Assembly: GCA_021613535.1 (NCBI GenBank)
Contig: CP075495.1
Coordinates: forward strand, 15,004,001 to 15,068,000
DNA length: 64,000 nucleotides
Source: Adineta vaga
Taxonomy: Eukaryota > Animalia > Rotifera
Reading direction: 5' to 3'
Below the pieces are notes generated by a model. That model was not told where the DNA came from and searched no databases. It worked only from the letters and a program-made list of their open reading frames with translations. A program made the translations under genes and the position numbers. Position 1 is the first letter of the stretch, and every line of letters begins with the position of its first letter. Shown piece by piece: positions 30,008 through 63,642 of the stretch.

Positions 30008-30533
30008 AACTTGTTATGATCGTACATATAAAAACATAATTTTCCATTAGAATCAGATTTTTCGTGATGTTTTCTGACTACTGCAAGACTATAATTATTG
30101 CATTAAAAAATAAAATGACATGTTGCTCAATCAGTACATTTAATCACAAAAGTGTATTGTACTTTGAGATTTTATGACTCATTCAGTATTATCATACACA
30201 ATTGTCCTTGTATGACGCCAATTAAGCGACGTAATATGACGATGCAAAGAAGAAAAAGGGAGAGAAATTACTGTTTATGTTTTTGTTATACTTGTACTTT
30301 GATATAAATAATGTTACGGATGATCGATCATAATTCAATGATTGCGATAATTATCAACATACAATAGAGCATTTATTTTTGAATCTCATTATTTCACTCG
30401 AATTTATATACGAACGTAAATTAGATCGAAAGGCAAAATTTATCTTCAGCAAGATATACTGTGCATAAGATTATTCTCTCGTTGTTTCATCCAACAGCTG
30501 TGATCTATTTTTAAAATATATTTTATATACATA

Positions 30534-31710: not shown

Positions 31711-34700
31711 ATTATGTTGCTTTTATTTCTGTTGAACATGATTTATTATATTTAAGATGTACAAAATATGATACTGATCTAATAAAATCTACATAGAATT
31801 TTTTAATAGTAAAAGATACTTTTTTTTCTCTGAAGAGACTATTTAACCTAGTCTAAGAGAACATGTGACATGATTTTAAATAACACAAAATAGATGTATA
31901 ATGTATAAAAATACTTGCCGATTTCTGTAAGACAATAATTTCATTGTTTAGTCATATTATTGTTTACACTAATTTAAAGACAATGGCAGTTGATAACACC
32001 ACTATAATTGACTTTTTTTTAGAATATATGCGAAACAAAGAATGTGTTCATATGAAATGCAATCAATATGAAAAGACAATTTAACAGTTTCCTTTCGAGA
32101 ATACCAATTTGTTTTTACTCAATTTTTATTTCTGTTTAATTTCTAGTTTGAGGTACTGTTTTAGTAATTATGATAAAATAATGATAATCATCAAGTCCTA
32201 AGTACGTCGCCTCACTTTATTCAAGACTCAGTAGTCCTTATAGTGGAAAAAGTGAAAAAGTATAATAAATAGATTTACTGAGGAATACTTCGGTTATCAA
32301 AATTTTACTTTATAAAGTAATAATTAATACATATTTGCCACTTTTTTGTTGCTTGCGTAGTTTTGATTCTTGAGGGTGTGGGTGCTGTTATATTACTACT
32401 GATATTATATTTTCTAATTGTAACAATCCTGTGGAAGCCTTTGTATGTCTCGGTACTGTCTCCCTGATCGTGTTATATGTTGTTGAGTTCTGCAAAATGA
32501 AACGTTCTACAAAATTTTGGCATGGCTCTGAACGTGTTCCTGATCCAACATTAGTTGCTGTTTCTAAAAGATTTGCGGTGACGTTGTTTGTAGTCGCACC
32601 ATTATTACATCGAACAGTAAAGTGACAGTAACCACTGGGAAAACAACTCCAAATTATATCGATCACTGCTTACAGTAAATAGAATATTAAAAGCCCTAGA
32701 AAGAGGCAGTTTATAACATATCATAATTGATTGGAATCTTCAAAAACAGCAATAATTTGATTTTTAATCAAAACTATACTCGATTAGGAGATTCTCACCG
32801 ATTGAAAATGACACAAGATAATGTATAATTGTCAGCACTCATCTTTAATAAACGATTCGAAACTCAGTTCTATTATAGACGTGTCAGATGGTTCTGTTTT
32901 ACCGGGTCATCTTTCAGTCGTCTGCCATCCCGCTTCGCTGACATATTTTTCCAATAACAATTTTTCTCCAGATAAAAAAGATTCTGAAATTAGCATATTA
33001 ATTGTGCTTTTCATGTTTCTTATAACTCAGACATAGAAATCTCAAGATTAAAAATATGTTTTTCTAAGTGGGTAGCACATCCACACCCTCACCCATATTG
33101 TGATTTAGAAGAAAACAAGAGAAAAGTAAATAACATACTGCCTTTCAAAAATATATAAATGAAAGATAAAATCGAATTAGTACACATTACTTCAGATTAG
33201 CTCGATCGTCTTTGCTGTGTCATAAATACGGTTTAAATCGAATTGAATAGAAGAATAAGTAGTGGTCAGAAATCTTTATTGTTTTGTTCTCGTCGTCATT
33301 GTTGGTAACAGTTTTGTATCAAAGTTAGTTGGAGTAGGATCGTCGTCAGATTGACATAGTTGTTAGAGAAAAACATTGACTAACAAATCTTTACTCTAGT
33401 AATAAATAGCACATATCTAAACATTCACCTACACACAACTTGCAGAACAAATATACAGAGAATGATTGATTGTGATAAAACAGTAAGAAAGTTCTTTCGT
33501 TCTTTTAGCACACATTCTATACTTTTCCTCGCTCTGTCAGATAAAATGATATTGATATTACCGAAAAGGGAACGGAAAGAAATCAATAGTCGTGTCGTCA
33601 TAGTCGTTTTTTTCTGTTCTTTATTATGTTAAAAATGAAACTGTTGCTTTTCTTGTTTTAATTGAAATCTAACGTAAGAACTGGTATGAATACAATAGAA
33701 TCATACGATGATCTCTTATATCTCAGTCAAAAGTTAGAGAAAAAAAGAGACTTTATTTCAGACGGTAATCAGAGGACTAAAAACTCTACAATGTATAATA
33801 TATGGCAAGAAAATATACTGTTAATGTATTGAAATTTCTTATAATGTGGAACGATCTAAATATGTAGATGTAAAACTAAGTCAAGTCCGTCTGTCTGTCC
33901 TTTTAGAATTAATTTAATCAGTTGGCGTACTTCGCGCACACCCTATTGGCACTGGAATTCGGTTTTCACTTTACTGGTTACACTTGTTTTTATTCTATGC
34001 TAAAATTCTAAAATTTTGAAATAAATCATTCGATTTCTTTTTTGCAAAGTTGTATAAAATAGATTGAATTGAATGAAACTAATCTTGAGGATGATGGTAT
34101 GAGTACGGCGTTTCTGTCCATCTAAAATCTTTACTCAAACACACTCACACCCTCCAGAATATTTATGTACAACGTTTTTATTTGATAATCGGGGAACCGG
34201 AATTGTTATACAAAACCGGCCAGATTTTTTGTCATTTTTTTGGCAGTATTTAACAATTCTTGTCTGCCCGGGTGTACACTGAAGATAAAAAAATGAATTC
34301 TGTTTTCTTTATTTTAAACCTCAAAGTGAAAAATGCGTTCTTTTCCACAACTTATGAAAACAAAAAGTGATTTGAAGAACTACACAAATTTTATTTTAAC
34401 TTAAAAGCATCTTGTGACAAGCAAAACAAAAAGAGTTTAAGAATATTTCATCGTGTAACGATGTTTCTTGTTCAATTCTACATTATGCGAGACTCTTTTC
34501 ACTTGATCAAATTGAAACATCTCTAAATTTGTTTCTTCGATTGCATCCGGATAGTTTTTCTTTTCAAGAAGCTCATTTTGACTAACAATTTACATCAGTT
34601 CCTACAATCCAGGGGTCCCATTAAATCGAATCGTATTTTCTAGAATTTGAATTGTTATTATGTCTGACGTTAAGAGAGGTCACTGGGATTTATTTTATCT

Positions 34701-35827
34701 ATTAAGGATTTATCGAGACTTACTGTTTGTATCAGTATTTCAGGCCATCCTTATCCGTCCGTTCGCCCTTATCTTCGCATACATCTTCACCCATACTGAG
34801 TTCTTATTATCATCAGGAAGTATGTGAGATGTATTTCAAAATGTATAAAGATTTATTAGAAATTTCAAAAACTCAATAATTTTCATAGTAAGAATTCCAG
34901 GAAAACCAAAAAAGCAAAAATTTTGGCGGATGCTTTTTAATGATTGTATGGATCAATTGTAAAGACATGATGTGGAGAATAAAGACCAGCATTAATACCA
35001 ATCACATCTTTTCTTCAAGCAACACAGATCGATAATGCTACAAAAATGTTACTTTTCCTTTTGAATAACGTAAAATTATAACCATTAAAAAATTCTGGAC
35101 CTCTTGTACTATTAAAGAATATCGATTTTTTGACGATAGATGAGCTTTATAGCAAATTGAATAACAACAGAATGCTTTTGTTGACTTCGCGTGAACGTTA
35201 GATTTTGGCTTGTATAAGAGCAAAGTTATGTACCAAAATAAAGTCGATATTATCCTTTTTCGATCGGTTCAGATGTTGCTTCTTCTTCCACAAAAGAAAA
35301 AATGCCGTATTCAGATGAAAATGATGTAGATAATTCAAATGATACGAAGCTAACAGATCGAAACTATCGTCTGTTTATCATTGATTAGTTAGTTAGTTAA
35401 AAGACCTCTACATCAGTTGAATCAACTGATTAAAAGTGGCGCATTGTTCTTTTTTGTTTTTCTTTTATAGTGTCAACTGTTTATTCAAGGTTTGGATATA
35501 TTTCATGATTTTTTTTCAAAAAAAACCTGTAAAATATTCCCTCGATCAACCACTAAACGAATAGCAACTAAGACAACAAATCAAAATACAACGATGAAAT
35601 AAAAGAATGAATTAACTACGTCTTTGTTTTCATCTAACAACACTCACACCTGCGTGCTCATCCACTCTCGATGAAAAATACATTTAAAAAAGAAACGTTT
35701 CTTTTTCTTCTACAAAAACCTTCAAACTTTCGATATAATACATAGAATTTGATTATTTTTTATTCATAAAAGATATTCTTGATTGAAAAGAAAAAAAATG
35801 ACATTCAATAAAAAAAAATTATCTTTC

Positions 35828-37040
35828 TTAATTCGATGGTTCCCACCGAGATTGAACAGAACTTGTACCAAAATAATAAAATCGTTCTTCTCTCTTACTC
35901 CATCGTTTGATCCAACCAAATGGTAGTTGAATACCTGAATCAGGTTCATCAGATGATGATGAAGATCGTCGTTCCACACTGACACAATCATGTGCTTCTT
36001 TCCAATCATCGTCACTGATTCTCAAGTCAATCTATGAAAAAAAAGGAAAACCTCTTCATCATCATCGTCAATATGTTCAATAAGCCAAAGACGTTTGCTT
36101 AAAGCTTGAATTTCTCTTTGTATCAATCGTTGACTTGTATCAGCAATGTATTGTTGAAATTCTGAGTCCAATAAACATTTCAATGGTACAACTTCTAGAA
36201 TATCTTCTGTTTTCTCATATTTCAATAAATGATCAAGATGATCAATAATTCTTTGATTGACAGATGATTTCAATTGATAACAAACGAGAAATCGTTGAGA
36301 AGATGAAGGATCAAGTGTAAATGGACGAAGAATACAAATTGATTTAAATGAATAATAAAGTAAATAAATTAAACCAGTTGTAAAACGTGTTAATGTATCT
36401 GTTAATTTACATATAAAATGACCATTTTCATGAAGTTTCGTCAATGCATTGCGACATGATATTAACATCTGACGTTTGTTATATTTTTCAAGATAACGTT
36501 GATTGATTTTTTGATTGATTGGTAAAATTGAAAGATCAGAACAAAGGAGATGAACTTTCGAATGAATCAAATCAGTTGATGGTTTATATTGAATTGATGA
36601 ACTCATTGGAAACGAGTTTTTCAGATCGGATATGATGAAACCATGAACATTATTTTGTTGTTGCCAAACAAGATATTCAGCAAAACCAGTTAATGATATA
36701 TTATCAATAAGAAATGAAAAAGGAGTTGAATCATTTGATTGTAGTGATGTCTGTTAAAAGAAAAATTAGATTCAGAACATCTTATTATTGTTACTTACTA
36801 ATTTGAAAAGCTTATCGAGTAATGCTAAATGAAATGCTGTTTGAGAATGAATAAAAATAACATCAATATTTCGATAGTTTTCATCTTTATTTAATAATTT
36901 CAGTTGATCAATGATAAATATTTTGGTTTTGAATGAATTGTCTTTGAGAACTTTCTCTAAATATTTTTTACATCTCTTGTACAAGGGTTCTAAATCATCG
37001 AATACTACATATGATGATAATGATCATCGACTAAAATGTT
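35828..37040 (-). pseudogene. 5'-truncated copy of the CMTR gene tail (degenerate CMTR1-like domain + WW)
   Basis: 35880-36790 is nearly identical to 45850-46790, including introns. 36800-37040 is homologous but diverged. There is no catalytic N-terminal domain or G-patch upstream. Confidence 0.8.
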
Positions 37041-38047: not shown

Positions 38048-41000
38048 TTAGATATTTATTAAAGGAAAATAAGTATAGAAATCTTTTGAATGAGCCAGTG
38101 GTATAAACATAATTAATTCCTTGATATTAACACAATTATGCCTTGTTTCTTCTCTTGTAAAATCTTCTGTAACGGTTCTTAATTCGTTATAGATGACCGT
38201 TAATTTGGATAGATATGGAATATATGTCTTTTTCTCATTTAAAAATTGTTCAACATAATCGATATTTGCACATAGTAAATCAAGTGACATAAGATGAGGA
38301 TATTCAGCAATTTCATATAATTGATTATTGTCACATGAAAGCATATTGAAATTATCTGGTGATTTTGAACCAGAATTCAGAATGCGAAAATTCTTCAAAA
38401 GTGGAAAAGCTCGAGCAACGCGAAGAAAGAATTGTTCATTGGATGGAATTATGTCATGTACCAGTAAATATTCAACACGACTAAATATAATATTTGGAAA
38501 TATGTGACCAATATCTTCTAGTTGATCAAATAGAAATGGAACTGTGAAAATATGACACACAGTTTCTGTAATGTTAATCTTATTGACAAGACAAACTGCA
38601 TGGTCTTGTCTGATATTTGTAAATGTCCGTTGAATATCTTCATCAGATATATGTGTTAAATCATTTGTTTCGTTATAAGTAGAAATATAAAAAGTGAATG
38701 ATTGTAGTTTTGGCATATGGGCAAGTATTTCATTTTGAATATGAACTCCATCAATAAATACGCTTCGGTTCTTTATAGGAAGATATAATGTCAATTTTTC
38801 CAGTAATGACATACGACGAAGGAGTGGAAGGATTTTATTATCGTACGAACAAGTTGGATGAAAAGTTTGTAATGAGAAACATTTCAAATTAGGTAAATCA
38901 TCCTAGAAAATCATAATATTGATTAAACTACTCGTTTTATCCTTTTTGAACTTTTCTTCGAAATATTTTTTTTTTGGTAACAAAGCTTTATTGTAAAAAA
39001 GAACAACACTGTAACATAAAGTCAACGGAAGGTATTGTACTTCTACATAAGCTGGAGTAGAGAAAAAAAAAAAGGACACATGACGTATGTCTTTTGTCCG
39101 TGACATAGTAATAAGAACGAGAAAAATTTTATATGCCAATAGTGAGTGTAGATGGGGTGACGCGTGTAAAGTCTTACATATGTGGTAGAAGAAAAAGAGA
39201 AAGAAAACAGAAAACAGAAGATATAGTGGTACTATATGGATAGATTGGAGAGGAAGAGAAAAGAAGCTGGATTGTATGTGACATGTTTTAAATCAGCAAA
39301 TATATTGACTCGATTTCATATTGCATGTAAGAACGAGCAAAGAATTTACTGGATATTGTAAGGATCAGCAAAGACGTTGACTCGATATCATATTGTATAT
39401 AAGAACGAGCAAGGAATTTACTGGATATTGTAAGGATCAGCAAAGACGTTGACTCGATATCATATTGTATATAAGAACGAGTAAAAGAATTTGCTGTATA
39501 CATGAATCGGTTTAAAGATTGGCTCGATATTATATTATATATAAGAATGCGATCAATAAATAACTGAATAGAACGAAAGAACGATACAGCATATAGATTG
39601 AATCGACTTCTTATTTTGTATAAGAACGAGTTAAACGAAGTAGCTGAATAGTATATTTGATTGCGATATATCGTTTTTTACATCGATTCGACTGACACAA
39701 GAATAGTCTATTCTCTCGATGTTACTATTATATGTAATGGTTGGTGATTTCTTTTTTAAATTTTGTCTAAGATGCATTGTAGATGATTCTTCAGTGTAAT
39801 GTCGTTGTTTGTTGTTGCCTTTTGAAGTGTATGTTTAAGGTCCTATTGCATAATCTTTGATTTTTGGAATGTTGCTGATCTTGTGGATATATTTGACAGA
39901 TGTATATATGGGTAGTCCGAGTGCAGCTCTAATTGCTTTATTCTGCATGATTTGTAAACGGTCCCATACTTTTGATCAGCAGTAAGGAGAATAGGATGTC
40001 CATAAATGATAACTGTGCGTACAATTGATTTGAAAATATTTATCATCGTCTTGTTGTTGGGTTCATATGCTGTTCTCGAAAGATATCGAAGTAGACCGAT
40101 CCGAGGAGCAATCTTGCTTTCAATATGTTCGAGATGTGCTCGCCATTTTAATCTTTTATCTATAATTACACCCAAGTAACGTGTGGAGTCCAGTGGTTTG
40201 ATGATGGTGTCTTCAACTTTAACTTTCACTGGATTCTTGTAGTGTTTTCTTGGATGTATGCTGAAGTGTATCAGCTCTGTCTTAGTTGGTTGAAGTTTTA
40301 ATTTCCATGACTTGCACCAACTTTCGAATGCATCTATGGATTGTTGTAATCTGGTGTTAAGATTTGTTAAGGTGTTGCCAGATGTCCATAATGCAGTGTC
40401 GTCGGCGAACAACCCATGTTCTGTATGAGTTGGTATTCCATTCATCGAATCTGCCGTATACATAATATAAAGTAATGGTGATAACGGAGATCCTTGTGGT
40501 GTACCGCTCTTCAGATTAAACGGACGTGATAATATATTTTCGATTTCAATTGCAGCCGTTCTATTGCTTAAGAATGAGATCAGATAGTTGATGATGAAAC
40601 AGGGAAGACGTAGATCATTAAGCTTGTATATCAAACCATCGTGCCATACCGAATCAAATGCGGCTTTGATGTCGAAAAGAATGACAGCTGAGTGACGTCG
40701 TCGACGTGGTCGTCTAAGTTGTCCTGCAGCGTATCTTTCTAATCGCACGATGTTGTATATAGTGCTTTTACCTGGTCTAAATCCGGCTTGATGTTGTGGT
40801 AAGATGTTTCGTCGTTCAAGTTCGAGCATTAAACGTTGTTTGATTATTTTCTCCAATAGTTTGCCTAAGCAACTAAGGAGACTAATCGGTCGATAGCTAG
40901 ACGGTTGTTGTTTGTCTTTCTTTGGCTTTAATAGAAGAATAATATTAGCCTTTTTCCACATTGCTGGAATATAACCTTGTTTCAAAATTGCATTAAACAG

Positions 41001-44000
41001 ATTTGTTAGATGCTGTACCAGTAATTTTGAATGATTCTTCAAACATCGGTTATGAATGTTGTCTGGACCAGTGGAGCTATTTCTAAGTTGTCTTATATGA
41101 TTTTTGACTTCTTTTTCTTTGATTTGCTTCCACTTTGGTGTGTTTGAAGAGGTTATAGTTTTACTTTTGACTTTGTTTGCTTGGCGTGTTACTTGATCAT
41201 GAAGTGGCAACGTATCAGCAGTGTGAGAGTAGACTTCATTTTCGAAGTAATCTGCAAATAAGTCTGCTTTCTCCTTGTCTGATGTTGCAGTTGTATTGTT
41301 GTATTTCATGATGTTGGCGTAGGTTTGCTTGATCCTTTTGTTGTGGAACTTGCGCACCGTCAGCCAAACTTTGTCCGAATACATTTTCTTATGGCATAAA
41401 GATGACATTAACTTGTTGAAGTTATTTCTTCTGTCGTTTCTAAGTGAATTTGTAAGCAAGACTTTGGAATTGTAATATAGATGTTTATCTAAGTTGTTTC
41501 CAGTCTTCTTCCATTTTCGATATGCTTGATGTTTTTGTTTTATCAGGCTTATCGATACTTCACTTGGTGTATACGTTCGGATCATCTGCTTTGTTTGTGG
41601 AACGGCTTCTTTTGTTGCTTCTAGTATACTAGTGGTAATGAATGATGTATATTCTTCTATGTCTGCTGTTGAATCTAAATGATGATCATTTTTCCACAGC
41701 ATCAGTTGTTGATCTAACTTGCACCTAAATTTTGACCATTTTGCTGCTTTGAAATTAAATAAAATTCTTGACGAAGCCGGTTTGGGTTCAGCTCCGCAAG
41801 GAATATCAAATGTTAATGGTTTATGGCCATTTAATGCACCGATTGTTGGATGAGTCTCAACGTTTGATATGAATGAAAGAAGTGGTTGACTTGCTAATCC
41901 AATCTAGTTTAACTTCATAATCATTTTTTTCGAAAGTTGGACTATCATCGTCGACACAATCAATAAGACCATCTTTAAATAATTCTTGCAGCTGTCTTCC
42001 TCTAGCATTAGCTTGTTGTGATCCCATATTATATAATGTTGCATTAAGATCACCCATGATAATGCAGTTGTTGTTGACGTTATAAAGTTCGTGGAATAAG
42101 TTGATATCGATCTTTGCTTTTGGTGGTACGTAAATGGAGGATATTAGTATTGATTTGAATGATTTAGTTCGAATCTCTACTGCTATCGCTTCATTCTTGC
42201 AGGTTGTTTTGTTTAGTACTTCTTGACACTTGATATGTTGTTTCACTGCTAGTAATACTCCACCCCCAGCTTGTCCTATTCGATCATTTCTGAAGATGTT
42301 ATAACCAAAAAGCGTGAATGGTCTTTCGCTCTTTAGATTAGTTTCATTAACAGAGATAATATCGTATTTGGAGAATCTGGCTAGGAGTTCATCTTTGTGT
42401 TTGGTAATTGAGTTAATGTTGATATGGCATAAACTAAGCATCGTTGCTGCTTGTTTTAAGTGTTTTCTTGTCGTTTATAGATGCATCAGGAGAGTTGTTG
42501 GAAGAAAGGGCTCTCTTGTTTGTATTGGATCCTTCTTTTGTATTTTGTGCGTCTTTTGATGTAGTAGAAGTTGATGGCATAGTAGGTTTATTTGAAGTGA
42601 CATTCTCTGTTGTAGACGATTTGTCAGCTTCATTCTGTTTTTTTTTGGTTTTGGTTTGATGATCTTAACTGCTTGACTTTGTTCGTTGGAATCAGAGTCT
42701 GAATCAGTTAATATATATTTTTCTTCATTATTACGATCGAGGAGTCCGAATGATTTTTCGATCTTCTTGATCTTCTGATGTAGTGCTTTGAATAGTCGAT
42801 TGGTAGTTTTTTCGATGATGGTTTCCATTTTGCTGGTAAGAGCATTAATGATATCGTCGAATAAATTGTCCGTTAATAGTTGTTTTTGTGTTTGGTTGAA
42901 TTGTGATAGAGGTGGGAAGTCATGTGTGCTGTAGATTGATGGTGCTTGTGTTACTTGTTTGCTTGTTGTTGCATATTGGTTAACCATGTTTTGCATCTTC
43001 TTTTCTTGTTCTCTATAATGTGAACATTCTTTGGAAGTAGCAATATGATTACCTTTACAGTTGTAGCACTTGACTGCGTCATCTGTAACAGTACATTTGT
43101 CGTTGCTATGATTTTCACCACATCGACTACATACTTGTTGCTTGGTTTTGCAGTATTTGGCTACATGGTTGTATTTTAAGCAAATGTAACATTGCACCGG
43201 TTTGGAATTTTGTGTGGCTGGTTCAGCGGTGAAGTGCATGCAATCCACTTGTAAACCAGTTTGCACAAAGATATTTCGATTTGTTGCATCGCTAAATGAT
43301 ATCTTGACTGTTCGTGTTGGAGTCTTACCATCTTTGCTTGTTAATCGAATAACTTCTGTTACTTCAAGACCAACGTTCTTTAGTGCTTCAGTTATTCGAT
43401 CGTTTGGTAGTTCTAGATCGACTCTTTTTACGAAGGCGATCTTTTCTGTGTCCTTGATTCTTTGTATAGATCTTGGAACGTATACCGTGGCTGATGGTTG
43501 ACCGTTTGACGATAATATTGATGAAAAGTCGTTTAATATGTTGTTGAACGATTTAACATCTCTTGCATATAATGTGAATATTCCATTTCGTCCAAGTTGG
43601 ATGTCATGGATATTGACTTCAGCAAGATGTTGCTTCAATATATCATTTAGCTGCAATTTGTTTAAGTTAACACCCTCTAGAATAAGAGGGGCGATACTAA
43701 ATGTTGGTTGGCTTGATTTTAAAGCATATGGTCCTGCTTTGCCATCTTGTGTTGTTCGTTGTGGGCTTTGTATGCTTTGTGAGCTTTGTGGCCCTTGTTT
43801 TCGTTGTGTGGTGGTTGCTCTTTGTTGGTTGTCCACGCTGTGATAGCGTCTCTGTTGACCACCGCCACCCCTTCCTCTCTTGGAAGGCATTAAAATCAGC
43901 ACCAGTTGTTGATAATTTGATGTAGATTGTTTTTGTTTTCTTGTTTGGGTTGATGAAGTACAGAGGATCTCGATGAAAAACCAGTTTTTTTAAGTCCTAG

Positions 44001-45410: not shown

Positions 45411-45797
45411 ACCTAGATTTGATATGTCATTGTGCCCAAAGACTAAAGGTGTATTTATATAGATATGTATGCGTATAGTTTGTTTTTAACCAATCTGATC
45501 ATTATGAAATAGAATAGATGACCTCTTTAAAAAAAACAAGAAATAGAAATATTTTATATTGTTGTAATAGATAAAGTTTTGAAATATTAAAATATGAGTT
45601 TTTTCCTTCACTTCTGGAACTGGTGCAAATTAATTTAGTGTAGGTAGTCGTCAATTCAGATAAAAAGGTGTTGAATATTTATAAAATAATTAGATATTTT
45701 TTAAGAATACACTCATGATCAATATACGATAGACTAAAATCATTTAAAATAAAGAAAAATGTCAATAATGGATTAAAAAAAAAGGATTATAATATGT

Positions 45798-48700
45798 TCA
45801 GTTCGGTGGTTCCCAACGGGATTCATTTGTATTTGTATTGAAATAATAAAATCGTTCTTCCCTCATACTCCATCGTTTGATCCAACCAAATGGTAGTTGA
45901 ATACCTGAATCAGGTTCGTCCGACGATGATGAAGATCGTCGTTCCACACTGACACAATCATGTGCTTCTTTCCAATCATCGTCCTTGATTCTCAAATCAA
46001 TCTATGAAAAAGATCAAATGAAAATAATGTTTGAGAAAATGAAAAAGAAAACCTCTTCATCATCATCGTCAATATGTTCAATAAGCCAAAGACGTTTGCT
46101 TAAAGCTTGAATTTCTCTTTGTATCAATCGTTGACTTGTATCAGCAATGTATTGTTGAAATTCTGAGTCCAATAAACATTTCAATGGTACAACTTCTAGA
46201 ATATCTTCTGTTTTCTCATATTTCAATAAATGATCAAGATGATCAATAATTCTTTGATTGACAGATGATTTCAATTGATAACAAACGAGAAATCGTTGAG
46301 AAGATGAAGGATCAAGTGTAAATGGACGAAGAATACAAATTGATTTAAATGAATAATAAAGTAAATAAATTAAACCAGTTGTAAAACGTGTTAATGTATC
46401 TGTTAATTTACATATAAAATGACCATTTTCATGAAGTTTCGTCAATGCATTGCGACATGATATTAACATCTGACGTTTGTTATATTGTTCAAGATAACGT
46501 TGATTGATTTTTTGATTGATTGGTAAAATTGAAAGATCAGAACAAAGAAGATGAACTTTCGAATGAATCAAATCAGTTGATGGTTTATATTGAATTGATG
46601 AACTCATTGGAAACGAGTTTTTCAGATCGGATATGATGAAACCATGAACATGATTTTGTTGTTGCCAAACAAGATATTCAGCAAAACCAGTTAATGATAT
46701 ATTATCAATAAGAAATGAAAAAGGAGTTGAATCATTTGATTGTAGTGATGTCTGTTAAAAGAAAAATTAGATTCAGAACATCTTATTATTGTTACTCACT
46801 AATTTAAAAAGTTTATCCAGTGATGCTAATTGAAATGCTGTTTGAGAATCAATAAATATTCCATGAATATTTCGATAGTTTTCATCTTTATTCAATAATT
46901 CTAGTTGATCAGCAAGGAATATTTTGGTTGTAGATAAATTATCTTTTTGAACTTTTTCATAATATTCTTCACGTTTCTTATATAATGATTCTAAATCATC
47001 AAATTTCACATATAATGACGATAAAACTGAATGTAAGCCCGATGCAATTGTAATGGATTTTGGATTTAATGAGAGAGGAGATGAACGAATTGAGATAGGT
47101 TGATCATAATTGAAAAATAAAGGTTCATCAACGACTTTTGGTAATTTCAAAGAAGAAGAAGATGATGATGATAATAGTATTGTAGTTGTTTGATTATGAT
47201 GACCTAGACCAAGGCGAGAGTTGAGCATAATTGTTTCGATGGGTGTTGATCGACCTTGGCCATGAGTGCCTAAACCTTGTCCTTCGATATGACCCATTTT
47301 TTTCATCATTTTCATTGCCAAAGATTCTTGTTGCTCATTATTGTTTGAAGAAACTGTCTCTATTTTATCGATCTCGTCATCACCATCTGTTGTTGTTGTC
47401 GTTGCTCTAAAATTCTTACTTCCAATAGTAACAGTTTTCCCTTGACCTAATGCACGTCTCTTGTTGGATTTGTCTTCTTCTGTTTCTTCTTCTGCATTAT
47501 CATTATCATTAGTTTTGGAATTTAATAAGAATTCTTCTCGAGAACGTTTTTTCTCTTGTCGATAAGCAAGATTCCCACCATCACGTTGTTTTAATCCACC
47601 TTTGACAGTTGAAGCACTATTTCCTAATGCTCTTGCTGAGCCATCTAGTTCAACATTATTAACAATACGTCTACGTTGTTCATAATGATAATCAATTGAA
47701 CAAAGTCGTCGAAATTCTTTAACAATATCAGTATTTAATCGATATATGGCGTGTTCAACATTTCGATTCCAAATTCTTTCTAAATCAAGATTGCGTTCAA
47801 GTGCTTGAATTTGTTTTATTGTAAAATATTCTGCAAATTTGATTAATTCATCAAGAAATGATTGTGGAATTGATTGTCGTGATATCAAAGCTTTACCAGA
47901 CGGAAATGTTGGCGAAACAAAGGAAAGTAATGATTGAATAATTTCAGGATGAATACCACGAAAGCCAAGTGCAATGATGTATGTTTCACCATTTGGTGCA
48001 CGTGACGATGCTGGTTTAAATATACTTAATTCTTTGAAATAAAGTGATAAAATATAAAGAAGACAAACTGTGTCACATTCAAATAAACTAAACATCTTTA
48101 AAACAAGTGAACCACCTTTGATTAATACTTTCATTGCACAAATCGCTTCTGTATAATGTAATTCAGAGACAATTGATTCTTGTTCGTTGGGATCACCAGA
48201 TGTATCAACTGATCCATCTCCAGTGACAAGATGAACACCAATTGAGTTTGATTCTTTCTAATTAATAGAAAACCTTTTTATTATTATCAATATATCGATA
48301 TAAAACAATGAGTTTACTTGTATTTTTTCCAATAGACCTTCAATATTATTTGGACTAAGAATATTTCCACTATTATCTCGGCCAAAATACCACTGATTCA
48401 ATGTTTCAACAATAAATCGATCATCGTCAACCATTGCTTCTTGATCGTTACCTTCATAATATGGATTAAGAGAAAGACCTGTCCATTGCCAATGTCGTTG
48501 AGATGAACGTGAATCTCTTCTTTCATAAGTTTTAGTATAATAGAAATTAGTGGCACAAATAAATGCACCTGGTGCTTCACAAACATGAGCACTTCGAAAT
48601 GATTCATTTTCAGATAAATCTATTGAAATCGAGATTCAGTTATAAAGAAATAATTCGTAAAGTTGTGTTTACCTTTAGGAATAAGAGTTGGATATTGAGA

Positions 48701-49105
48701 AAAGATTTCAGCCATTTTAATCCAAGCATTTGTACACATTTCAATATGATTTTGATCTCGTAATGACCAAACAATTCGACCTGTCATATTTGTCTTTCCT
48801 GTAAGTTTTTTCCATTCTTTAATATCTTTTTCATTTAAACGATTTCTTGTATCATTCAATTTTGTTTTTAATTGCATTAATTCTTCGATTTCCCATCGAT
48901 TCTCTCGAAAAAGATTGTCTCGTAATAGTAATGAATGATCTTTGAGTGAAGTTATCATTGAAAAACTTTTCTTTTTACGAAATAATTCGTCTCGTCCTTG
49001 ATTAACAAGACGAGATTCATCATCAGTGAGAGGAATTGGTCTGTCACGATTATAATTTGGATAATTATTATACCTTCCACGTGATCCTCTATTATAATTT
49101 GACAT
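45798..49105 (-). CDS. CMTR2: Cap-specific mRNA 2'-O-methyltransferase (CMTR2-type) fused to G-patch, degenerate CMTR1-like MTase and WW domain, about 1031 aa
   Basis: Exons 49105-48673, 48619-48318, 48257-46800, 46751-46053 and 46001-45798 sum to 3096 nt in frame. CMTR2 motifs: EMCTNAWIKM, HVCEAPGAFI, LNPYYEGND, LVTGDGS, GGSLVLKMF, KPASSRAPNGETY. G-patch: MKMMKKMGHIEGQGLG...RLGLG. WW: LPFGW...YYFN...SRWEPP. Confidence 0.88.
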
Positions 49106-49594
49106 TATCGAATTAATATCTTAATAAAATATAATAAATCTAAAAACAAATCAAATGTAGAAGAAAAATTATTTCGATGATTACGAACAGTTAGAATAAA
49201 TTTATATTAGAGAAATGTGTATGATACCGAATTTTTTCACCTGATGTTTGTCGAAGAATGTAATGATGTTTTCTCCATCATACTGTTAATATTTGTTTTC
49301 TTTCTACCTACAAAACTATTTGATTCTTTTTTGGACAAACATTGAAATTTCATGAAAAATAAATTCAAAAAATAGAATTCAATAAAGAGAGAAAGAATAA
49401 CTATATTTTCAAAGCAATAAATCATGAGATGTTTATCAGGTATGACTCAATTCTTTTCGTTTGATATAACAAAGTTGAGTAAGTTGATAAAAATGTCTCA
49501 TGTAATAAATTCAAAAAATGAGATAAAGAATGAAAAAGTCTCTTTTATTCTTTTCTCTTACGGAGCAATGTTTTTTTTTCGTTGCAACATTGTC

Positions 49595-51372
49595 AAATAA
49601 CCAATGGGAACTTTTTAAAATGCTTTTTTTTCTCTTTGCTGAATCAGTAAATAAATAATCTGTCAGTATTATTCAAGGGTAAGTCAAACAAATACTTCAC
49701 TTTCGTAGTCTACAAAAATAGATGACGAGCAAACTGATTAATAAAACAGAAAAGAAACCTTAAAAGAGAATAATGAAAAAAACATAGGAAGCATTGAAAT
49801 ATTTATCAAGTTTCTTCGAATATGCATTGCCAAATGACAATATTCTTCACTGGAAGTGACACTTAACGGTTACTTTTTAAAAAAAAATTTTTTCTTTTCC
49901 GATTCAAAAACCATTATTTCTCACGCCTCAAGTACTAGTATCAATTATATAATGGTAAAATTTTATGCAAAAAGTAATTACTTCTGACAAGCAACTATAA
50001 AGTGCCACCACTTTTTTTTACGCAGATAATTTGAAAGAAAAAAAATCACTGTTTACATAGAAAACTCAGGACATCAAAAGCAAATAATAGTAGACTCAAT
50101 TCTTTTTTTTTCTCGCACCTTCTCTTCGATAACTTTGTGAAGGAAAATGAAAAAACTCTTTATGAAAACCTAGACTATCTGGATGAGACAATGTCGTCAA
50201 TAATTAATTCACTGTTTTGCTGCGTTGTTTGTAAAGTGTTTGTTCTCTTCAGTTTGTTTTTGTATGACACTGGGAAAAAACTGACATAATTAAAGGTATA
50301 AAAACACTATCAAACGTCCATTTCTTATCATTGTTGAAAGATAACAGAGTATGGCTTCAAATCAAGAACCTAGAGACTACTACGGTCCAAATCGTCGACC
50401 ACGATCAAATTATAATACTAATAATTCATATGGAAGAGGACGTAACAGCAATCGAGGATCATTTCAAAGTCACCCTCATCATTACGAAAGTGATTCAAGA
50501 TCTGAAGAATATATGTCCGATCAGCAAAATCATCGAAGACAACGCCAGTTTGATAATTCTTCAACAGTTGAACTAAAACCAATTGATGATGAAAAAAAAG
50601 CTTATGCTGTGAATCTTCAACTAGACCCAGTTGAAATGGGTATCATAGCTCGAAATAATCGGTGGCATCAAGAATTCAAAGGTTTAGGCGCATTTAATCG
50701 TTATTTTGGTTTATTATCATCAGAACATGGTTTTGGTTATACACTTCCTGATATTTGGGATGGCTATTTTCATATAACACTTGCTAAATTTACTACTAAA
50801 ATATCAGCGGAAAAATTCAAAGATAAATTTCAACAATTTCGATATCCGATTGAAACGATTCCTTATATTCCGGATGTTGTTTTCCATACATCAACTATTG
50901 AAAGAATTCCGGGACCAAATCGTGGCAGAGGTCGAGAGAACATTGATTTTATTGTCTTGCCTATTGACATTACTCCTGAAGTTCGATCATTTTATGAAAG
51001 GATTCAATTATTACTTGATGCAATTAAAGAACTAGCCGGCAATCCAGAAGATTGGATCACAACAGAACTTAAGAAACTTCATGTTACTATAAGAAAATAT
51101 TCAAATATTGATTATAATCTTTATCCACTAAATAATATTCGAATTCAAGAATTTCCACTCGAATTTCGATGTTCATATGTCGGTGTTCGAGAACCACGAG
51201 ACACAACAATTAATCGAATCATGCAGAATGAAGATTTGTTTCGTGAATGGTTGTCTGGTGTAACTGAAATCCGGAGACATTGTTCAGGCTGTCAAACATT
51301 AATTACAACAAGGGATTGGCAAGGTTTCTGCTTTGCATGTGGAAACTACGAAATTATCAATCCTCTTTGGTC
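49595..51372 (+). repeat. About 1.8-kb duplicated block (promoter + 2H gene), copy 1
   Basis: Nearly identical to 61767-63545; identity ends abruptly after cctctttggtc. Confidence 0.9.
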
Positions 51373-51460
51373 TACTACTGGCACCAATTCCAATCTGCAA
51401 CCTATTCCGAATGATACTCTTAGTCTACTAGTTGAAGACTTATCCCTTAACGGTAACTAA
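50351..51460 (+). CDS. 2H-phosphoesterase-superfamily protein with R/G/N/Y-rich N-terminus and C-terminal Zn ribbon, copy 1
   Basis: Intronless 369 aa. Two h-H-x-T-h motifs (FHITL, LHVTI) lie about 100 aa apart. CSGC-x12-CFAC near the C-terminus. Confidence 0.7.
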   Translation: MASNQEPRDYYGPNRRPRSNYNTNNSYGRGRNSNRGSFQSHPHHYESDSRSEEYMSDQQNHRRQRQFDNSSTVELKPIDDEKKAYAVNLQLDPVEMGIIARNNRWHQEFKGLGAFNRYFGLLSSEHGFGYTLPDIWDGYFHITLAKFTTKISAEKFKDKFQQFRYPIETIPYIPDVVFHTSTIERIPGPNRGRGRENIDFIVLPIDITPEVRSFYERIQLLLDAIKELAGNPEDWITTELKKLHVTIRKYSNIDYNLYPLNNIRIQEFPLEFRCSYVGVREPRDTTINRIMQNEDLFREWLSGVTEIRRHCSGCQTLITTRDWQGFCFACGNYEIINPLWSTTGTNSNLQPIPNDTLSLLVEDLSLNGN

Positions 51461-56909: not shown

Positions 56910-57489
56910 TTATATTGGATAGGTATAGAATTAATTAGTTAATTAAAAAAATTTAAAACCAATTGAATCAGCCGAAGAAACTATTAAAGTGCTACATTTT
57001 CTTTTTTTTTTTGTTCCCCTTTTATATTTTTACTTGTACAGCTATGTCTTGTATTTTTCCTTATTTTTCTCTCTCGAGAAACTTGAAAAAAGACTCTTTC
57101 GATCGATCGTTAGACAAACAGCAACCAGAACAACAAACTACAATACAATGACGCACTAGAATAAACTAATTGCGTTTCTTTTTTTATTTACCAGTTTCTG
57201 CGTTAGTATTATAGGTGACATTATTTGCAGATTGTTGAGTACAAATTTATGAAGAAACATAATCTGAAACTTTTCTGCATTGTGAAATGATCAATCTGGA
57301 GAACATTGCATCTGAATTGTTGGTTATAGTTGAATTTGTCAACAGTTGAAATTACTTTTTAATTAAAAAAAGAATCATTTTTTTCTGTAAAAGTAGTCTG
57401 CATTATGGAAACAATGTTTAAAAAATTGATTATTTATTATTAGAAAAAAAATATTTTTGTTTCAAACAAAAGAAAATGTCAGTAAATAA

Positions 57490-58000
57490 TCAAAAGTATT
57501 TCTCTTCGCTCAGTGGTTCCAAACAAGATTGATCAGAACTTGTATCAGAATAATAAAATCGTTCTTCTCTCTTACTCCATCGTTTGATCCAACCAAATGG
57601 TAGTTGAATACCTGAATCAGGTTCGTCCGACGATGATGAAGATCGTCGTTCCACACTGACACAATCATGTGCTTCTTTCCAATCATCGTCCTTGATTCTC
57701 AAATCAATCTATAAAAAAGATCAAATGAAAAGAATTATTGAGAAAATAAAAAAGAAAACCTCTTCATCATCATCGTCAATATGTTCAATAAGCCAAAGAC
57801 GTTTGCTTAAACCTTGAATTTCTCTTTGTATCAATCGTTGACTTGTATCAGCAATGTATTGTTGAAATTCTGAGTCCAATAGACATTTCAATGGTACAAC
57901 TTCTAGAATATCTTCTGTTTTCTCATATTTCAATAAATGATCTAGATGATTTCTATTGATAACAAACGAGAAATCGTTGAGAAGACGAAGGGTCAAGTGA
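57490..58000 (-). pseudogene. Third, shorter copy of the CMTR tail (end of exon 4 + WW exon)
   Basis: Nearly identical to 45845-46320 with a 26-bp internal deletion. The second WW tryptophan is lost (SCLEP). Confidence 0.85.
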
Positions 58001-58157
58001 ATGAGGATGAAGATTGAAATGGACTTTTGATTTGTAATCTAGCGTAGAACCTTAAAAAAATGAAGTTATGAATATTATCTACATCGATAGTATCAGTCGA
58101 AAGATATACAGTTTGCAAGGATACGGTTTTTTATTGAAACTACTCAGAAAATAATTC

Positions 58158-59330
58158 TTATTCAATCTTTTTAACCGATGCAGATGTTTTTTGATTGAGT
58201 TCAGTTAGTTTTTTATCGTAGGCTGATTTCAACATATTATCGAGTTTTTTGTACTGTTTATTTTCGATTTCAGTCCAGAGTTGTTGTAATTGTTCAAGTG
58301 TTATACAACGCCTGACTTTGCTACAATAATTAACTTGTTCAATAGTTTCAGGCGGCATTGCTTCCGAACTAGTTAATTCACATGATGTTTCATTACATAG
58401 AAATGGAACATCCTCAACATTAATTCTTTGATGAAATAGTTTTAAACCCGATCTTTTTTCAAGATCCTTAATTGATACTGCAAAATCAGTTAATGGACGA
58501 TTTCGATCGATTGGTTCATTTGGTACAACGAAGCAGCCAACAGCCATTTCATGTTGATCTTTATTTTCAACTAAAATACATTTGAATAAATGAGTAGGTA
58601 CATGGACTTCATTCGGACCAATAACTGCATGTGTCATTTGTTTGCAGGGAATATTTAAATCATTGTTATCCTTCTAAATATATATATATATATAAATATA
58701 TATAAAAGATTGAATTTTTAAAATGACTATGTATTTTAATAAAATCACCTTTTCTTTGTCCTCGACGGGAATAAACAAAGGGCCAGTTATAATATGAACA
58801 AAATCAAATTTATCAGCTAACTGTCGCGCAAATTGTTCAATTCGATACCAATAATTCGCATTATTATCAAGATCTTGGGGAACAATATTAGCTGATAAAA
58901 TAAATGTTTCATCAATAGCTTGTCGATCAGTAAATTTATGATCACCAGCTGGTGCCATATGACCTCTTGACCAACCAGAATCAAAATAATCTTCGTTTGT
59001 AGCTCGAAATTGTTGTGGAGCTTGTTGACATTCACTCTTAAATTCAGATCCAGCACGCTTAATAGTTGGTAAAAGAGAACGACTCGATAAGAAATCACGT
59101 GACAGTGAATAACCAACCCATGATGGAATTCGTCGTACATAATCAATTGATGTGATATATTGCTGATAAAACTCAAGGTTCTGAGACGAAGGTAAACCAT
59201 ATTTTATAAAATTTAAATAAGGATGTTGTTCAATGTCATTTGATGATTTAGTCTTGAGACGAGTGATCACGCTTGAGACAAATAAACCAGTGACGGTACC
59301 CGTAGAGAAAAAGAATACATATCGTTTCAT
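58158..59330 (-). CDS. EXOG: EXOG-like mitochondrial endo/exonuclease (EndoG family), 2 exons, about 365 aa
   Basis: SGWSRGHMAPAG has the SRGH of EXOG rather than the DRGH of EndoG. Also ANIVPQ...NN-x-x-Y-W, ITGPLF, VPTHLFK and a C-terminal wing-like helix (AYDKKLTEL). Intron 58748-58674 keeps the frame. Confidence 0.88.
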
Positions 59331-61766: not shown

Positions 61767-63545
61767 AAATAACCAGTGAAAACTTTTCAAAATGCTTTTT
61801 TTTTCTCTTTGCTGAATCAGTAAATAAATAATCTGTCAGTATTATTCAAGGGTAAGCCAAGCAAATACTTCACTTTCGTAGTCTACAAAAATAGATGACG
61901 AGCAAACTGATTAATAAAACAGAAAAGAAACCTTAAAAGAGAATAATGAAAAAAACATAGGAAGCATTGAAATATTTATCAAGTTTCTTCGAATATGCAT
62001 TGCCAAATGACAATATTCTTCACTGGAAGTGACACTTAACGGTTACTTTTTAAAAAAAAATTTTTTCTTTTCCGATTCAAAAACCATTATTTCTCACGCC
62101 TCAAGTACTAGTATCAATTATATAATGGTAAAATTTTATGCAAAAAGTAATTACTTCTGACAAGCAACTATAAAGTGCCACCACTTTTTTTTACGCAGAT
62201 AATTTGAAAGAAAAAAAATCACTGTTTACATAGAAAACTCAGGACATCAAAAGCAAATAATAGTAGACTCAATTCTTTTTTTTTCTCGCACCTTCTCTTC
62301 GATAACTTTGTGAAGGAAAATGAAAAAACTCTTTATGAAAACCTAGACTATCTGGATGAGACAATGTCGTCAATAATTAATTCACTGTTTTGCTGCGTTG
62401 TTTGTAAAGTGTTTGTTCTCTTCAGTTTGTTTTTGTATGACACTGGGAAAAAACTGACATAATTAAAGGTATAAAAACACTATCAAACGTCCATTTCTTA
62501 TCATTGTTGAAAGATAACAGAGTATGGCTTCAAATCAAGAACCTAGAGACTACTACGGTCCAAATCGTCGACCACGATCAAATTATAATACTAATAATTC
62601 ATATGGAAGAGGACGTAACAGCAATCGAGGATCATTTCAAAGTCACCCTCATCATTACGAAAGTGATTCAAGATCTGAAGAATATATGTCCGATCAGCAA
62701 AATCATCGAAGACAACGCCAGTTTGATAATTCTTCAACAGTTGAACTAAAACCAATTGATGATGACAAAAAAGCTTATGCTGTGAATCTTCAACTAGACC
62801 CAGTTGAAATGGGTATCATAGCTCGAAATAATCGGTGGCATCAAGAATTCAAAGGTTTAGGCGCATTTAATCGTTATTTTGGTTTATTATCATCAGAACA
62901 TGGTTTTGGTTATACACTTCCTGATATTTGGGATGGTTATTTTCATATAACACTTGCTAAATTTACTACTAAAATATCAGCGGAAAAACTCAAAGATAAA
63001 TTTCAACAATTTCGATATCCGATTGAAACGATTCCTTATATTCCGGATGTTGTTTTCCATACATCAACTATTGAAAGAATTCCGGGACCAAATCGTGGCA
63101 GAGGTCGAGAGAACATTGATTTTATTGTCTTGCCTATTGACATTACTCCTGAAGTTCAAACATTTTATGAAAGGATTCAATTATTACTTGATGCAATTAA
63201 AGAACTAGCCGGCAATCCAGAAGATTGGATCACAACAGAACTTAAGAAACTTCATGTTACTATAAGAAAATATTCAAATATTGATTATAATCTTTATCCA
63301 CTAAATAATATTCGAATTCAAGAATTTCCACTCGAATTTCGATGTTCATATGTCGGTGTTCGAGAACCACGAGACACAACAATTAATCGAATCATGCAGA
63401 ATGAAGATTTGTTTCGTGAATGGTTGTCTGGTGTAACTGAAATCCAGAGACATTGTTCAGGCTGTCAAACATTAATTACAACAAGGGATTGGCAAGGTTT
63501 CTGCTTTGCATGTGGAAACTACGAAATTATTAATCCTCTTTGGTC
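61767..63545 (+). repeat. About 1.8-kb duplicated block, copy 2
   Basis: Matches 49595-51372. Confidence 0.9.
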
Positions 63546-63642
63546 AAGTTTCGGTAATAATTCTAGTTTACGTCAAATTCAGCAAGCAAATTCTGAAAAT
63601 AGTGTTCTAAATCAATTAGTTGAAAATATATCTCTGAAATAA
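62524..63642 (+). CDS. 2H-phosphoesterase/Zn-ribbon protein, copy 2
   Basis: 372 aa with 5 substitutions versus copy 1 up to INPLWS, then a different C-terminal tail. Confidence 0.7.
   Translation: MASNQEPRDYYGPNRRPRSNYNTNNSYGRGRNSNRGSFQSHPHHYESDSRSEEYMSDQQNHRRQRQFDNSSTVELKPIDDDKKAYAVNLQLDPVEMGIIARNNRWHQEFKGLGAFNRYFGLLSSEHGFGYTLPDIWDGYFHITLAKFTTKISAEKLKDKFQQFRYPIETIPYIPDVVFHTSTIERIPGPNRGRGRENIDFIVLPIDITPEVQTFYERIQLLLDAIKELAGNPEDWITTELKKLHVTIRKYSNIDYNLYPLNNIRIQEFPLEFRCSYVGVREPRDTTINRIMQNEDLFREWLSGVTEIQRHCSGCQTLITTRDWQGFCFACGNYEIINPLWSSFGNNSSLRQIQQANSENSVLNQLVENISLK

What the first reader, a model, noticed from the sequence alone, without database searches (positions are those of the whole stretch)
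45798..49105. CMTR2-CMTR1 chimeric cap methyltransferase: motif-intact cap2-type MTase + G-patch + degenerate cap1-type MTase + WW
Seen: the N-terminal domain has CMTR2-type motifs with an intact K-D-K-E tetrad (WIKM, VTGDG, VLKM, NGETY). A G-patch, a second Rossmann MTase and a terminal WW follow. Known: G-patch (DHX15 binding) and WW (Pol II CTD binding) belong to CMTR1 and are absent from canonical CMTR2. The second domain resembles CMTR1 motifs as I recall them: GFAEYLVWQQQNHVHGF vs GFSEYVLWRKKWHAKGF; GHFICK; GLIYLLYYSF; VVPL...EF-x-x-Y. It has lost the SAM loop (DVCAGPGG), the first catalytic K and the final E (SQRF). No guanylyltransferase-like domain is evident. Inference: a cap2 enzyme carrying a CMTR1-like module as a targeting scaffold. 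It could be a lineage-specific fusion or a relic showing that the inactive C-terminal domain of CMTR2 came from CMTR1.
Basis: partly seen in the sequence, partly recalled or inferred. Interest (0 to 1): 0.85.

Follow-up and report, generated by a model that had tools for sequence, protein, structure and literature searches.

The report
Rotifer's borrowed, ancestral-style cap methyltransferase
This rotifer has a third mRNA cap-methylating enzyme whose closest relatives are fungal, and its layout (shared with many single-celled eukaryotes) suggests that the dead back half of the animal cap2 enzyme is a worn-down cap1-type enzyme.

Summary
This is one five-exon, 1031-codon gene, and all four splice joints appear in transcript-like contigs. 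It encodes a motif-intact CMTR2-type methyltransferase, a G-patch, a dead CMTR1-like methyltransferase and a WW domain.

It is not a lineage-specific fusion. G-patch-bearing CMTR2 also occurs in Endogonales fungi, choanoflagellates, amoebozoans, a malawimonad, chlorophytes, a ctenophore and probable sponges. The dead domain groups with ordinary CMTR2 C-domains (98/92).

This third copy is sister to Endogone/Jimgerdemannia (100/100); grouping it with animals is rejected (AU p=2e-8). It was most likely transferred horizontally before the sampled bdelloid genera split; the donor is not settled. A 2H-phosphoesterase-like gene sits beside it in four other bdelloid loci checked.

Likely function: a cap-adjacent 2'-O-methyltransferase targeted via DHX15 and the Pol II CTD (inferred, untested). 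The proteins are in databases; I found no paper on the layout or the transfer, and no earlier scan note on this gene elsewhere in this genome.

The parts
48673..49105 (-). Exon 1: R/G/N/Y-rich head, start of the CMTR2-type MTase, first catalytic Lys (48718)
48318..48619 (-). Exon 2: CMTR2-type SAM-binding motif I with His/Glu (48587-48567)
46800..48257 (-). Exon 3: rest of the active MTase (D 48218, K 48098, E motif 47993-47979), linker, G-patch, start of the dead MTase
47640..48925 (-). Active-type CMTR2 (cap2) Rossmann MTase domain, approximate limits across exons 1-3
47544..47561 (-). Basic cluster aligning with the human CMTR1 N-terminal NLS region (putative NLS)
   Evidence: alignment; NLS at residues 2-19 per PMC6071836; function inferred
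47199..47327 (-). G-patch (His at the aromatic position; glycines and GLG leucines kept)
   Evidence: Pfam PF01585 E 4.7e-13
46080..47130 (-). Degenerate CMTR1-like MTase (K->Q at 46838-46824 motif, SAM loop lost at 46706-46674, D and K kept, E->Q at 46301-46290), approximate limits
46053..46751 (-). Exon 4: core of the dead MTase
45798..46001 (-). Exon 5 with WW domain (45896-45804) and stop
   Evidence: Pfam PF00397 E 7.4e-10
35782..37017 (-). 5'-truncated duplicate of the 3' third of the gene; last intron shrunk to about 20 nt; probable pseudogene fragment
57460..58013 (-). Shorter 3' duplicate with a 26-nt deletion and damaged WW end; pseudogene fragment
50351..51460 (+). Head-to-head intronless 369-aa 2H-phosphoesterase-like gene with four conserved cysteines; linked to the orthologue in other bdelloids

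Best explanation
The gene is an expressed, horizontally acquired extra CMTR2 that keeps an old, widespread eukaryotic layout: active MTase, (NLS), G-patch, dead CMTR1-type MTase, WW. It came from a non-animal eukaryote, probably Endogonales fungi or a source shared with them, before the sampled bdelloid genera split, and gained four short introns later. SHOWN: anatomy, splicing, motif states, distribution, tree position, and the two native paralogues. INFERRED mechanism: domain 1 binds SAM and capped RNA and 2'-O-methylates cap-adjacent nucleotides (N2, possibly also N1/N3); the dead domain supports RNA binding, as the human CMTR2 second domain does; the G-patch binds DHX15/Prp43, which unwinds structured 5' ends or regulates the enzyme; the WW docks on the phosphorylated Pol II CTD. 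The result would be a nuclear, co-transcriptionally targeted cap2-type enzyme, supplementing a native CMTR2 that lacks these handles.
For: Identity of the first MTase domain (Rotaria orthologue) is 52-55% to Endogonales versus mostly 36-44% to animal CMTR2. In the ML tree, exon 3 lies in a bdelloid clade sister to Endogonales (100/100) and animals form a separate clade (100/98); grouping with animals is rejected, AU p=2.2e-8. The second domain and full-length trees give the same pairing. Native intron-rich CMTR1 (C2:13.79 Mb) and animal-type CMTR2 without a G-patch (C1:8.40 Mb) are present with intact motifs. The fungal genes and one Didymodactylos copy are intronless. All CMTR2 residues shown by mutagenesis to matter in PMC3941023 are identical or K->R. 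dN/dS against Rotaria is about 0.16 (active half), 0.11 (G-patch), 0.29 (dead domain) and 0.11 (WW exon). Exon 4 scores 135 bits against a CMTR1 profile and 45 against a CMTR2-N profile; for animal CMTR2-C the profile E-values are 3e-27 and 7e-14. The fold of domain 2 best matches CMTR1, Z 32.1, rmsd 2.3 A over 299 residues. G-patch/DHX15 and WW/CTD roles are shown for human CMTR1 (PMC6071836).
Against: There are no biochemical data. Bdelloids and Endogonales are sisters, not nested, so the direction of transfer is not shown. No other fungi appeared among the listed hits, and the fungal genes are intronless among intron-bearing neighbours, so the fungal copy may itself be acquired. The G-patch aromatic residue is His here. 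The CMTR1 profile was built from hits found with exon 4, which inflates that one comparison. AU tests reject neither C+N (p 0.14, 0.24) nor C+CMTR1 (p 0.31). CMTR position specificity is loose in animals (PMC9479742).
Confidence: 0.7

Rival explanations
1. Same gene and function, but the donor was a third, unsampled eukaryote that supplied both bdelloids and Endogonales, or the gene moved from rotifer to fungus.
For: Sister rather than nested position. Only Endogonales among listed fungi. Fungal copies are intronless beside intron-bearing genes. One short domain-2 tree nests the fungi with Didymodactylos (98/80). Unnamed environmental proteins with the full four-part layout exist (P0187, P0192).
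Against: Bdelloid monophyly is 100/99 on full-length proteins. Bdelloids are known recipients of foreign genes (PMC4632278). No closer relative turned up in metagenome or viral scans; viral relatives are 23-35% identical and lack a G-patch.
Confidence: 0.3
2. No transfer: an ancient opisthokont paralogue kept only in bdelloids and Endogonales and lost everywhere else.
For: The layout is old and CMTR genes are often lost or duplicated (PMC3113572).
Against: It needs many independent losses. Bdelloid-fungal identity (54-61% for Didymodactylos/Rotaria versus Endogone) is far above the 36-45% typical between major lineages in this family. Bdelloids already hold the vertical animal copy.
Confidence: 0.05
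3. A bdelloid-specific fusion of CMTR2 with a CMTR1 copy.
For: Domain 2 is visibly CMTR1-like, and bilaterian CMTR2 lacks a G-patch and WW.
Against: The same layout occurs in fungi, choanoflagellates, amoebozoans, a malawimonad and chlorophytes. Domain 2 groups with all CMTR2 C-domains (98/92). Bdelloid domain 2 + CMTR1 as one clade is rejected, AU p=0.02. The native CMTR1 is separate and intact.
Confidence: 0.01
4. The G-patch and WW are kept, but the protein's selected role is not co-transcriptional mRNA cap2 methylation: it acts on a special RNA class (snRNA, spliced-leader or foreign RNA), perhaps together with the linked 2H phosphoesterase, or has a non-catalytic role.
For: Native CMTR1 and CMTR2 already exist, so plain redundancy explains long retention poorly. 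The 2H gene is linked in A. vaga, A. steineri, two Rotaria species and Didymodactylos. Human CMTRs methylate TMG-capped snRNA in vitro (PMC3113572). A methyltransferase-independent role of CMTR2 is reported (PMC13343190, abstract only).
Against: Linkage may be ordinary conserved synteny (a CRAL/TRIO gene is also nearby in both Adineta). One R. socialis assembly lacks the 2H gene within 10 kb (L034). No substrate data.
Confidence: 0.25

Closest known systems
CMTR2 / hMTr2 / FTSJD1 (cap2 2'-O-methyltransferase)
   Same: Active N-terminal Rossmann MTase with K-D-K-E, His in motif I, conserved cap-binding residues; inactive second Rossmann domain in the same chain.
   Different: Has a G-patch and basic cluster between the domains and a C-terminal WW; the second domain is much less decayed; it branches with Endogonales, not animals; it coexists with a native CMTR2.
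CMTR1 / hMTr1 / FTSJD2 (cap1 2'-O-methyltransferase; PDB 4N48, 8P4E)
   Same: The back half repeats the order NLS, G-patch, MTase fold, WW; fold Z 32, rmsd 2.3 A.
   Different: That MTase lacks the SAM loop, first Lys and last Glu; there is no guanylyltransferase-like domain; a CMTR2-type MTase precedes it. UniRef auto-names several orthologues 'methyltransferase 1', which is misleading.
Endogonales FtsJ-domain proteins (Endogone sp. FLAS-F59071; Jimgerdemannia RUP49154.1, RUS24368.1)
   Same: Same FtsJ-G-patch-FtsJ(-WW) layout; closest non-bdelloid relatives in every tree.
   Different: Intronless, 53-55% GC; uncharacterised; no shared gene neighbours.
ESM Atlas cluster 'CMTR2' (G-patch 96%, FtsJ 96%, 56 members, commonest Rotifera)
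   Same: The family is already clustered in databases.
   Different: Automatic name only; no description found in the searched literature.
ASFV EP424R and giant-virus single-domain MTases
   Same: Structural relatives of domain 1.
   Different: Single domain, low identity, no G-patch; not the donor.

Membership tests
CMTR2 (cap2 MTase) | N-terminal Rossmann MTase with K-D-K(-E) catalytic residues | tested here: met
   K117, D235, K275 equivalents and the E motif present
CMTR2 (cap2 MTase) | Motif I His with shifted acidic residue (H142/E145) | tested here: met
   Exon 2, 48587 and 48578 (feature per PMC3113572)
CMTR2 (cap2 MTase) | Cap/RNA-binding residues K74, L77, W85, T89, K307 | tested here: met
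   R, L, W, T, R (two conservative changes) (PMC3941023)
CMTR2 (cap2 MTase) | Second, inactive Rossmann domain in the same chain | tested here: met
CMTR2 (cap2 MTase) | Groups with CMTR2 catalytic domains, apart from CMTR1 | tested here: met
   The Rotaria orthologue's domain 1 lies in the CMTR2-N clade, 100/100; window exon 3 is sister to the A. ricciae orthologue
CMTR2 (cap2 MTase) | Methylates the second transcribed nucleotide | not testable with these tools
   needs an assay
Animal (vertically inherited) CMTR2 orthologue | Branches within Metazoa | tested here: not met
   AU p=2.2e-8; a separate animal-type copy exists
CMTR1 (cap1 MTase) | G-patch directly before the MTase domain; C-terminal WW | tested here: met
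CMTR1 (cap1 MTase) | Intact SAM loop and K-D-K-E in the post-G-patch MTase | tested here: not met
CMTR1 (cap1 MTase) | Guanylyltransferase-like domain (animal CMTR1) | tested here: not met
   No Pfam hit; only about 40 residues between MTase and WW
CMTR1 (cap1 MTase) | Second domain is phylogenetically derived from CMTR1 rather than from domain 1 | tested here: inconclusive
   Favoured in one tree (88/91), unresolved with bacterial outgroups; AU p 0.14-0.31; similarity and fold favour CMTR1
G-patch DHX15/Prp43 cofactors | G-patch consensus with conserved glycines, hydrophobic and aromatic positions | tested here: inconclusive
   Pfam 49 bits; both GLG leucines kept; aromatic position is His here (Tyr/Phe in most orthologues)
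G-patch DHX15/Prp43 cofactors | Binds and stimulates DHX15 | not testable with these tools
   needs a pull-down
Bdelloid horizontally acquired genes | Strongly supported grouping with non-metazoans; integrated in the host genome and expressed | tested here: met
   host-like GC (29-32%) and short spliced introns

The most novel reading that the evidence does not exclude
The ancestral eukaryotic CMTR2 was a cap2 enzyme joined to a whole CMTR1-type protein and recruited co-transcriptionally through DHX15 and Pol II. Most animals lost those handles, which made cap2 largely a later, cytoplasmic step. Bdelloids regained the ancestral mode by horizontal transfer, possibly as a two-gene RNA-end module with the adjacent 2H phosphoesterase.
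Probability: 0.3. Interest if true: 0.75.

Novelty: new variant of a known kind. Interest (0 to 1): 0.55.

Why it matters
1. It gives a concrete origin for the unexplained, essential dead domain of human CMTR2. Across eukaryotes there is a graded series: G-patch + CMTR1-like domain + WW (bdelloids, Endogonales); G-patch + decayed domain (choanoflagellates, algae, amoebae, ctenophore, probable sponges); decayed domain only (cnidarians, bilaterians).

2. It adds a second G-patch-bearing enzyme family. A 2018 paper knew CMTR1 as the only annotated one (PMC6071836).

3. It is an apparent eukaryote-to-animal transfer of core mRNA-processing machinery, retained under purifying selection beside both native paralogues. 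Foreign genes in bdelloids are mainly described as enzymes for catabolism and stress responses (PMC4632278).

4. It offers a natural protein for testing whether cap2 methylation can be made co-transcriptional.

Tried and rejected
Two separate genes, or an annotation artefact: rejected. The active MTase half and the G-patch share one exon, the exon 3-4 joint is spliced, and orthologues are full length.

Contamination of the rotifer assembly: rejected (chromosome-scale contig, host GC, spliced introns, orthologues in three genera). Rotifer contamination of the fungal assemblies: unlikely (53-55% GC, fungal sequences form their own clade).

Viral donor: 32 viral loci are 23-35% identical and lack a G-patch; none is close.

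Bifunctional cap1+cap2 enzyme: no second domain examined keeps a full SAM loop plus K-D-K-E; the closest are environmental P0309/P0126 with K-D-R-E.

Shared synteny with the fungal loci: none. A cap-metabolism cluster (RAI1-like, EEP nuclease, DcpS near the A. steineri orthologue): not conserved in this genome.

Uninformative searches: the C-terminal half of the Endogone protein returned only four fungal-type hits; the first bacterial outgroup scan found nothing; paper searches for bdelloid cap methyltransferase HGT and for choanoflagellate CMTR2 found nothing. The AU test of fungi nested in bdelloids did not finish.

Operator rules: the spliced model was searched and placed in trees exon by exon. 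The joined protein was never built; full-length Rotaria and Endogone orthologues stood in for folding and searches. Locus L084 (and, more weakly, L118, L136, L147) from the metagenome scan looks vertebrate and may be human: it was scored once in a bulk comparison before this was noticed, then deleted from the working folder and not used further.
Full report
OBSERVATION. The minus strand holds five exons (49105-48673, 48619-48318, 48257-46800, 46751-46053, 46001-45798) separated by GT-AG introns of 53, 60, 48 and 51 nt. Their lengths sum to 1031 codons plus stop. Contigs from probable RNA runs skip exactly these four introns and cover about 45750-49140, with nothing on the flanks. The runs are only guessed to be RNA and no one contig spans the gene. 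Pfam finds FtsJ and G-patch in exon 3, FtsJ in exon 4 and WW in exon 5. Against a primate CMTR2, the residues tested in PMC3941023 map as K74->R, L77, W85, T89, K117, H142, E145, D235, K275, K307->R. The second domain matches human CMTR1 at E 1.7e-20; it lacks the first Lys (Q), the GPGG loop and the last Glu (Q), and keeps the middle Asp and Lys. Exon 3 also aligns to CMTR1 residues 14-129, including the basic NLS region and the G-patch.

HOST AND PARALOGUES. The genome is 100.8 Mb in six contigs. Orthologues come from Rotaria, Adineta and Didymodactylos, with A. ricciae closest, so the host is a bdelloid rotifer, consistent with Adineta vaga (an earlier scan note also says so). The genome has a separate intron-rich CMTR1 at C2:13.79 Mb with G-patch, intact SAM loop, K-D-K-E and a WW-like end. 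It also has an animal-type CMTR2 at C1:8.40 Mb with intact motifs and no G-patch. The window gene is therefore a third CMTR, present as one full copy. Two broken 3' fragments lie at 35782-37017 and 57460-58013.

DISTRIBUTION. FtsJ + G-patch CMTR2 proteins occur in Endogone and Jimgerdemannia, three choanoflagellates (Didymoeca, Choanoeca, Mylnosiga), two amoebozoans (Planoprotostelium, Protostelium), the malawimonad Gefionella, five chlorophytes, the ctenophore Bolinopsis, proteins that group with the sponge Oscarella, and many unnamed eukaryotes. Among named animal CMTR2s in my set, 1 of 21 has a G-patch. The terminal WW is narrower: bdelloids, Endogonales and at least two environmental proteins. 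The ESM Atlas already holds the family as a 56-member cluster. The layout is thus old and widespread, and is most simply read as ancestral, with loss of the G-patch in cnidarians, bilaterians and Oscarella (inference).

ORIGIN OF THE BDELLOID COPY. Domain 1 of the Rotaria orthologue is 52-55% identical to Endogonales proteins and mostly 36-44% to animal CMTR2. In an ML tree (LG+C20 PMSF, 42 rows; 27 near-duplicate, partial or compositionally odd rows left out), window exon 3 falls in a bdelloid clade (98/84) sister to Endogonales (100/100), while all other animals form their own clade (100/98). Forcing the bdelloid copy with animals is rejected (AU p=2.2e-8). Domain 2 and full-length trees repeat the pairing, with bdelloid monophyly 100/99. 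The Endogone, Jimgerdemannia and one Didymodactylos genes are intronless; the Adineta and Rotaria genes have introns at matching positions, so introns were probably gained afterwards. Viral relatives are distant and lack a G-patch, and metagenomes gave no closer non-bdelloid relative. Horizontal transfer before the sampled genera split is the best reading, in line with PMC4632278 (nearly half of bdelloid foreign genes predate the family split, over 60 Mya). The direction is not shown: the two groups are sisters, and no other fungus appeared among the listed hits.

ORIGIN OF THE DEAD DOMAIN. Nearly all CMTR2 second domains tested score higher against a CMTR1 profile than against a CMTR2 catalytic-domain profile (exon 4: 135 vs 45 bits; Oscarella 128 vs 52; Xenopus 66 vs 35; Bombus is an exception at 13 vs 16). 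Profile-profile E-values for animal C-domains are 3e-27 vs 7e-14. Caveat: the CMTR1 set was retrieved with exon 4. An AlphaFold model of the Rotaria second domain (pLDDT 80, pTM 0.82) matches CMTR1 residues 172-523 at Z 32.1 and rmsd 2.3 A, ahead of ASFV EP424R at Z 24.8. In one tree all C-domains, including exon 4 and animal CMTR2-C, form a clade (98/92) joined with CMTR1 (88/91). A bdelloid-specific capture of CMTR1 is rejected (p=0.02). With bacterial RlmE outgroups the base is unresolved, and AU tests reject neither alternative. So the back half of CMTR2 is a CMTR1-type module in order, sequence and fold. Whether it arrived by fusion with a CMTR1 paralogue or by duplication of the MTase domain inside a CMTR1-like ancestor is open. 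Werner et al. (PMC3113572) derive CMTR2 from a cap1-MTase gene duplication and describe its C-domain as inactive and essential; in the passages I read they mention a G-patch only for CMTR1. My paper searches found no description of this layout or of the transfer.

MECHANISM. Shown: motif states, expression and purifying selection on all parts (dN/dS vs Rotaria about 0.16, 0.11, 0.29 and 0.11 for the active half, G-patch, dead domain and WW exon). From known biology: human CMTR2 needs both domains in one chain for RNA binding and methylation (PMC3941023); the CMTR1 G-patch binds DHX15 and its WW is needed for Pol II CTD binding (PMC6071836); CMTR2 is mainly cytoplasmic and position specificity is loose (PMC9479742). 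Inferred: domain 1 methylates cap-adjacent riboses, domain 2 supports RNA binding, and the G-patch and WW deliver the enzyme to DHX15 and nascent transcripts, making a nuclear cap2-type enzyme (about 0.55 for this targeting step alone). The His at the G-patch aromatic position may weaken helicase binding, though it recurs in A. ricciae, Choanoeca and Gefionella.

NEIGHBOUR. An intronless 369-aa gene at 50351-51460, head-to-head with the CMTR gene, has two HxT motifs and four conserved cysteines. It has no Pfam hit and only lead-level 2H-phosphoesterase look-alikes. Its homologue lies head-to-head with the orthologue in A. steineri, R. socialis (one of two assemblies within 10 kb) and Rotaria sp. 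Silwood2, and two copies lie upstream in Didymodactylos. All three copies in this genome are here. Co-transfer, functional pairing and plain synteny are all possible.

VERDICT. Real, expressed and conserved; a CMTR2-family member of a non-animal subtype; not a new fusion. The interest lies in the ancestral layout that links CMTR2's dead domain to CMTR1, and in the horizontal gain of a core capping enzyme. New variant of a known kind; interest 0.55.

Noticed in passing
window 50351-51460 (+), 62524-63642 (+); third copy at G000:C2:15067909-15068823: 2H-phosphoesterase-like gene with four conserved cysteines and no Pfam hit; linked to the CMTR orthologue in Adineta, Rotaria and Didymodactylos; no viral homologue found.
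   Followed up: partly
L230 (Adineta steineri orthologue locus) 3128-3868, 16916-18046, 23324+: RAI1/DXO-like, EEP nuclease and DcpS genes lie within 10 kb of the CMTR orthologue, a cluster of RNA-end enzymes; these neighbours are elsewhere in the window's genome.
   Followed up: partly
window 35782-37017 and 57460-58013: Broken 3' duplicates; the middle of the 36-kb copy is near-identical to the gene while its ends are clearly more diverged, suggesting gene conversion. Run X5 covers only this 3' third, so a truncated transcript may exist.
   Followed up: partly
window 46003-46060: A second joint at the last intron (56 nt skipped, two other letters between) in three runs; probably an allele or a paralogous copy.
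   Followed up: no
window 2594-18399 vs 18399-33978: Tandem segmental duplication of about 15.8 kb at 94-97% identity (TPR protein, CRAL/TRIO protein and others); one 408-aa ORF is split in the second copy.
   Followed up: no
window 39292-43902 (-): LINE-type retrotransposon (gag-like ORF, endonuclease-like ORF, reverse transcriptase) with a short tandem repeat at its 3' end.
   Followed up: no
window 58158-59330 (-): Endonuclease G-like DNA/RNA non-specific nuclease gene (PF01223).
   Followed up: no
P0309, P0126 (environmental eukaryotes): CMTR2 proteins with a cold-shock domain and G-patch whose second MTase keeps K, D, E and a glycine-rich SAM-like loop (second K->R): the least decayed second domains seen.
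   Followed up: no
P0005/P0006 and P0001/P0175: Two diverged copies of this gene in Didymodactylos and in some Rotaria and Adineta species.
   Followed up: no
L084 (also L118, L136, L147): Vertebrate-like, possibly human, contigs returned by the metagenome scan; dropped once noticed.
   Followed up: no
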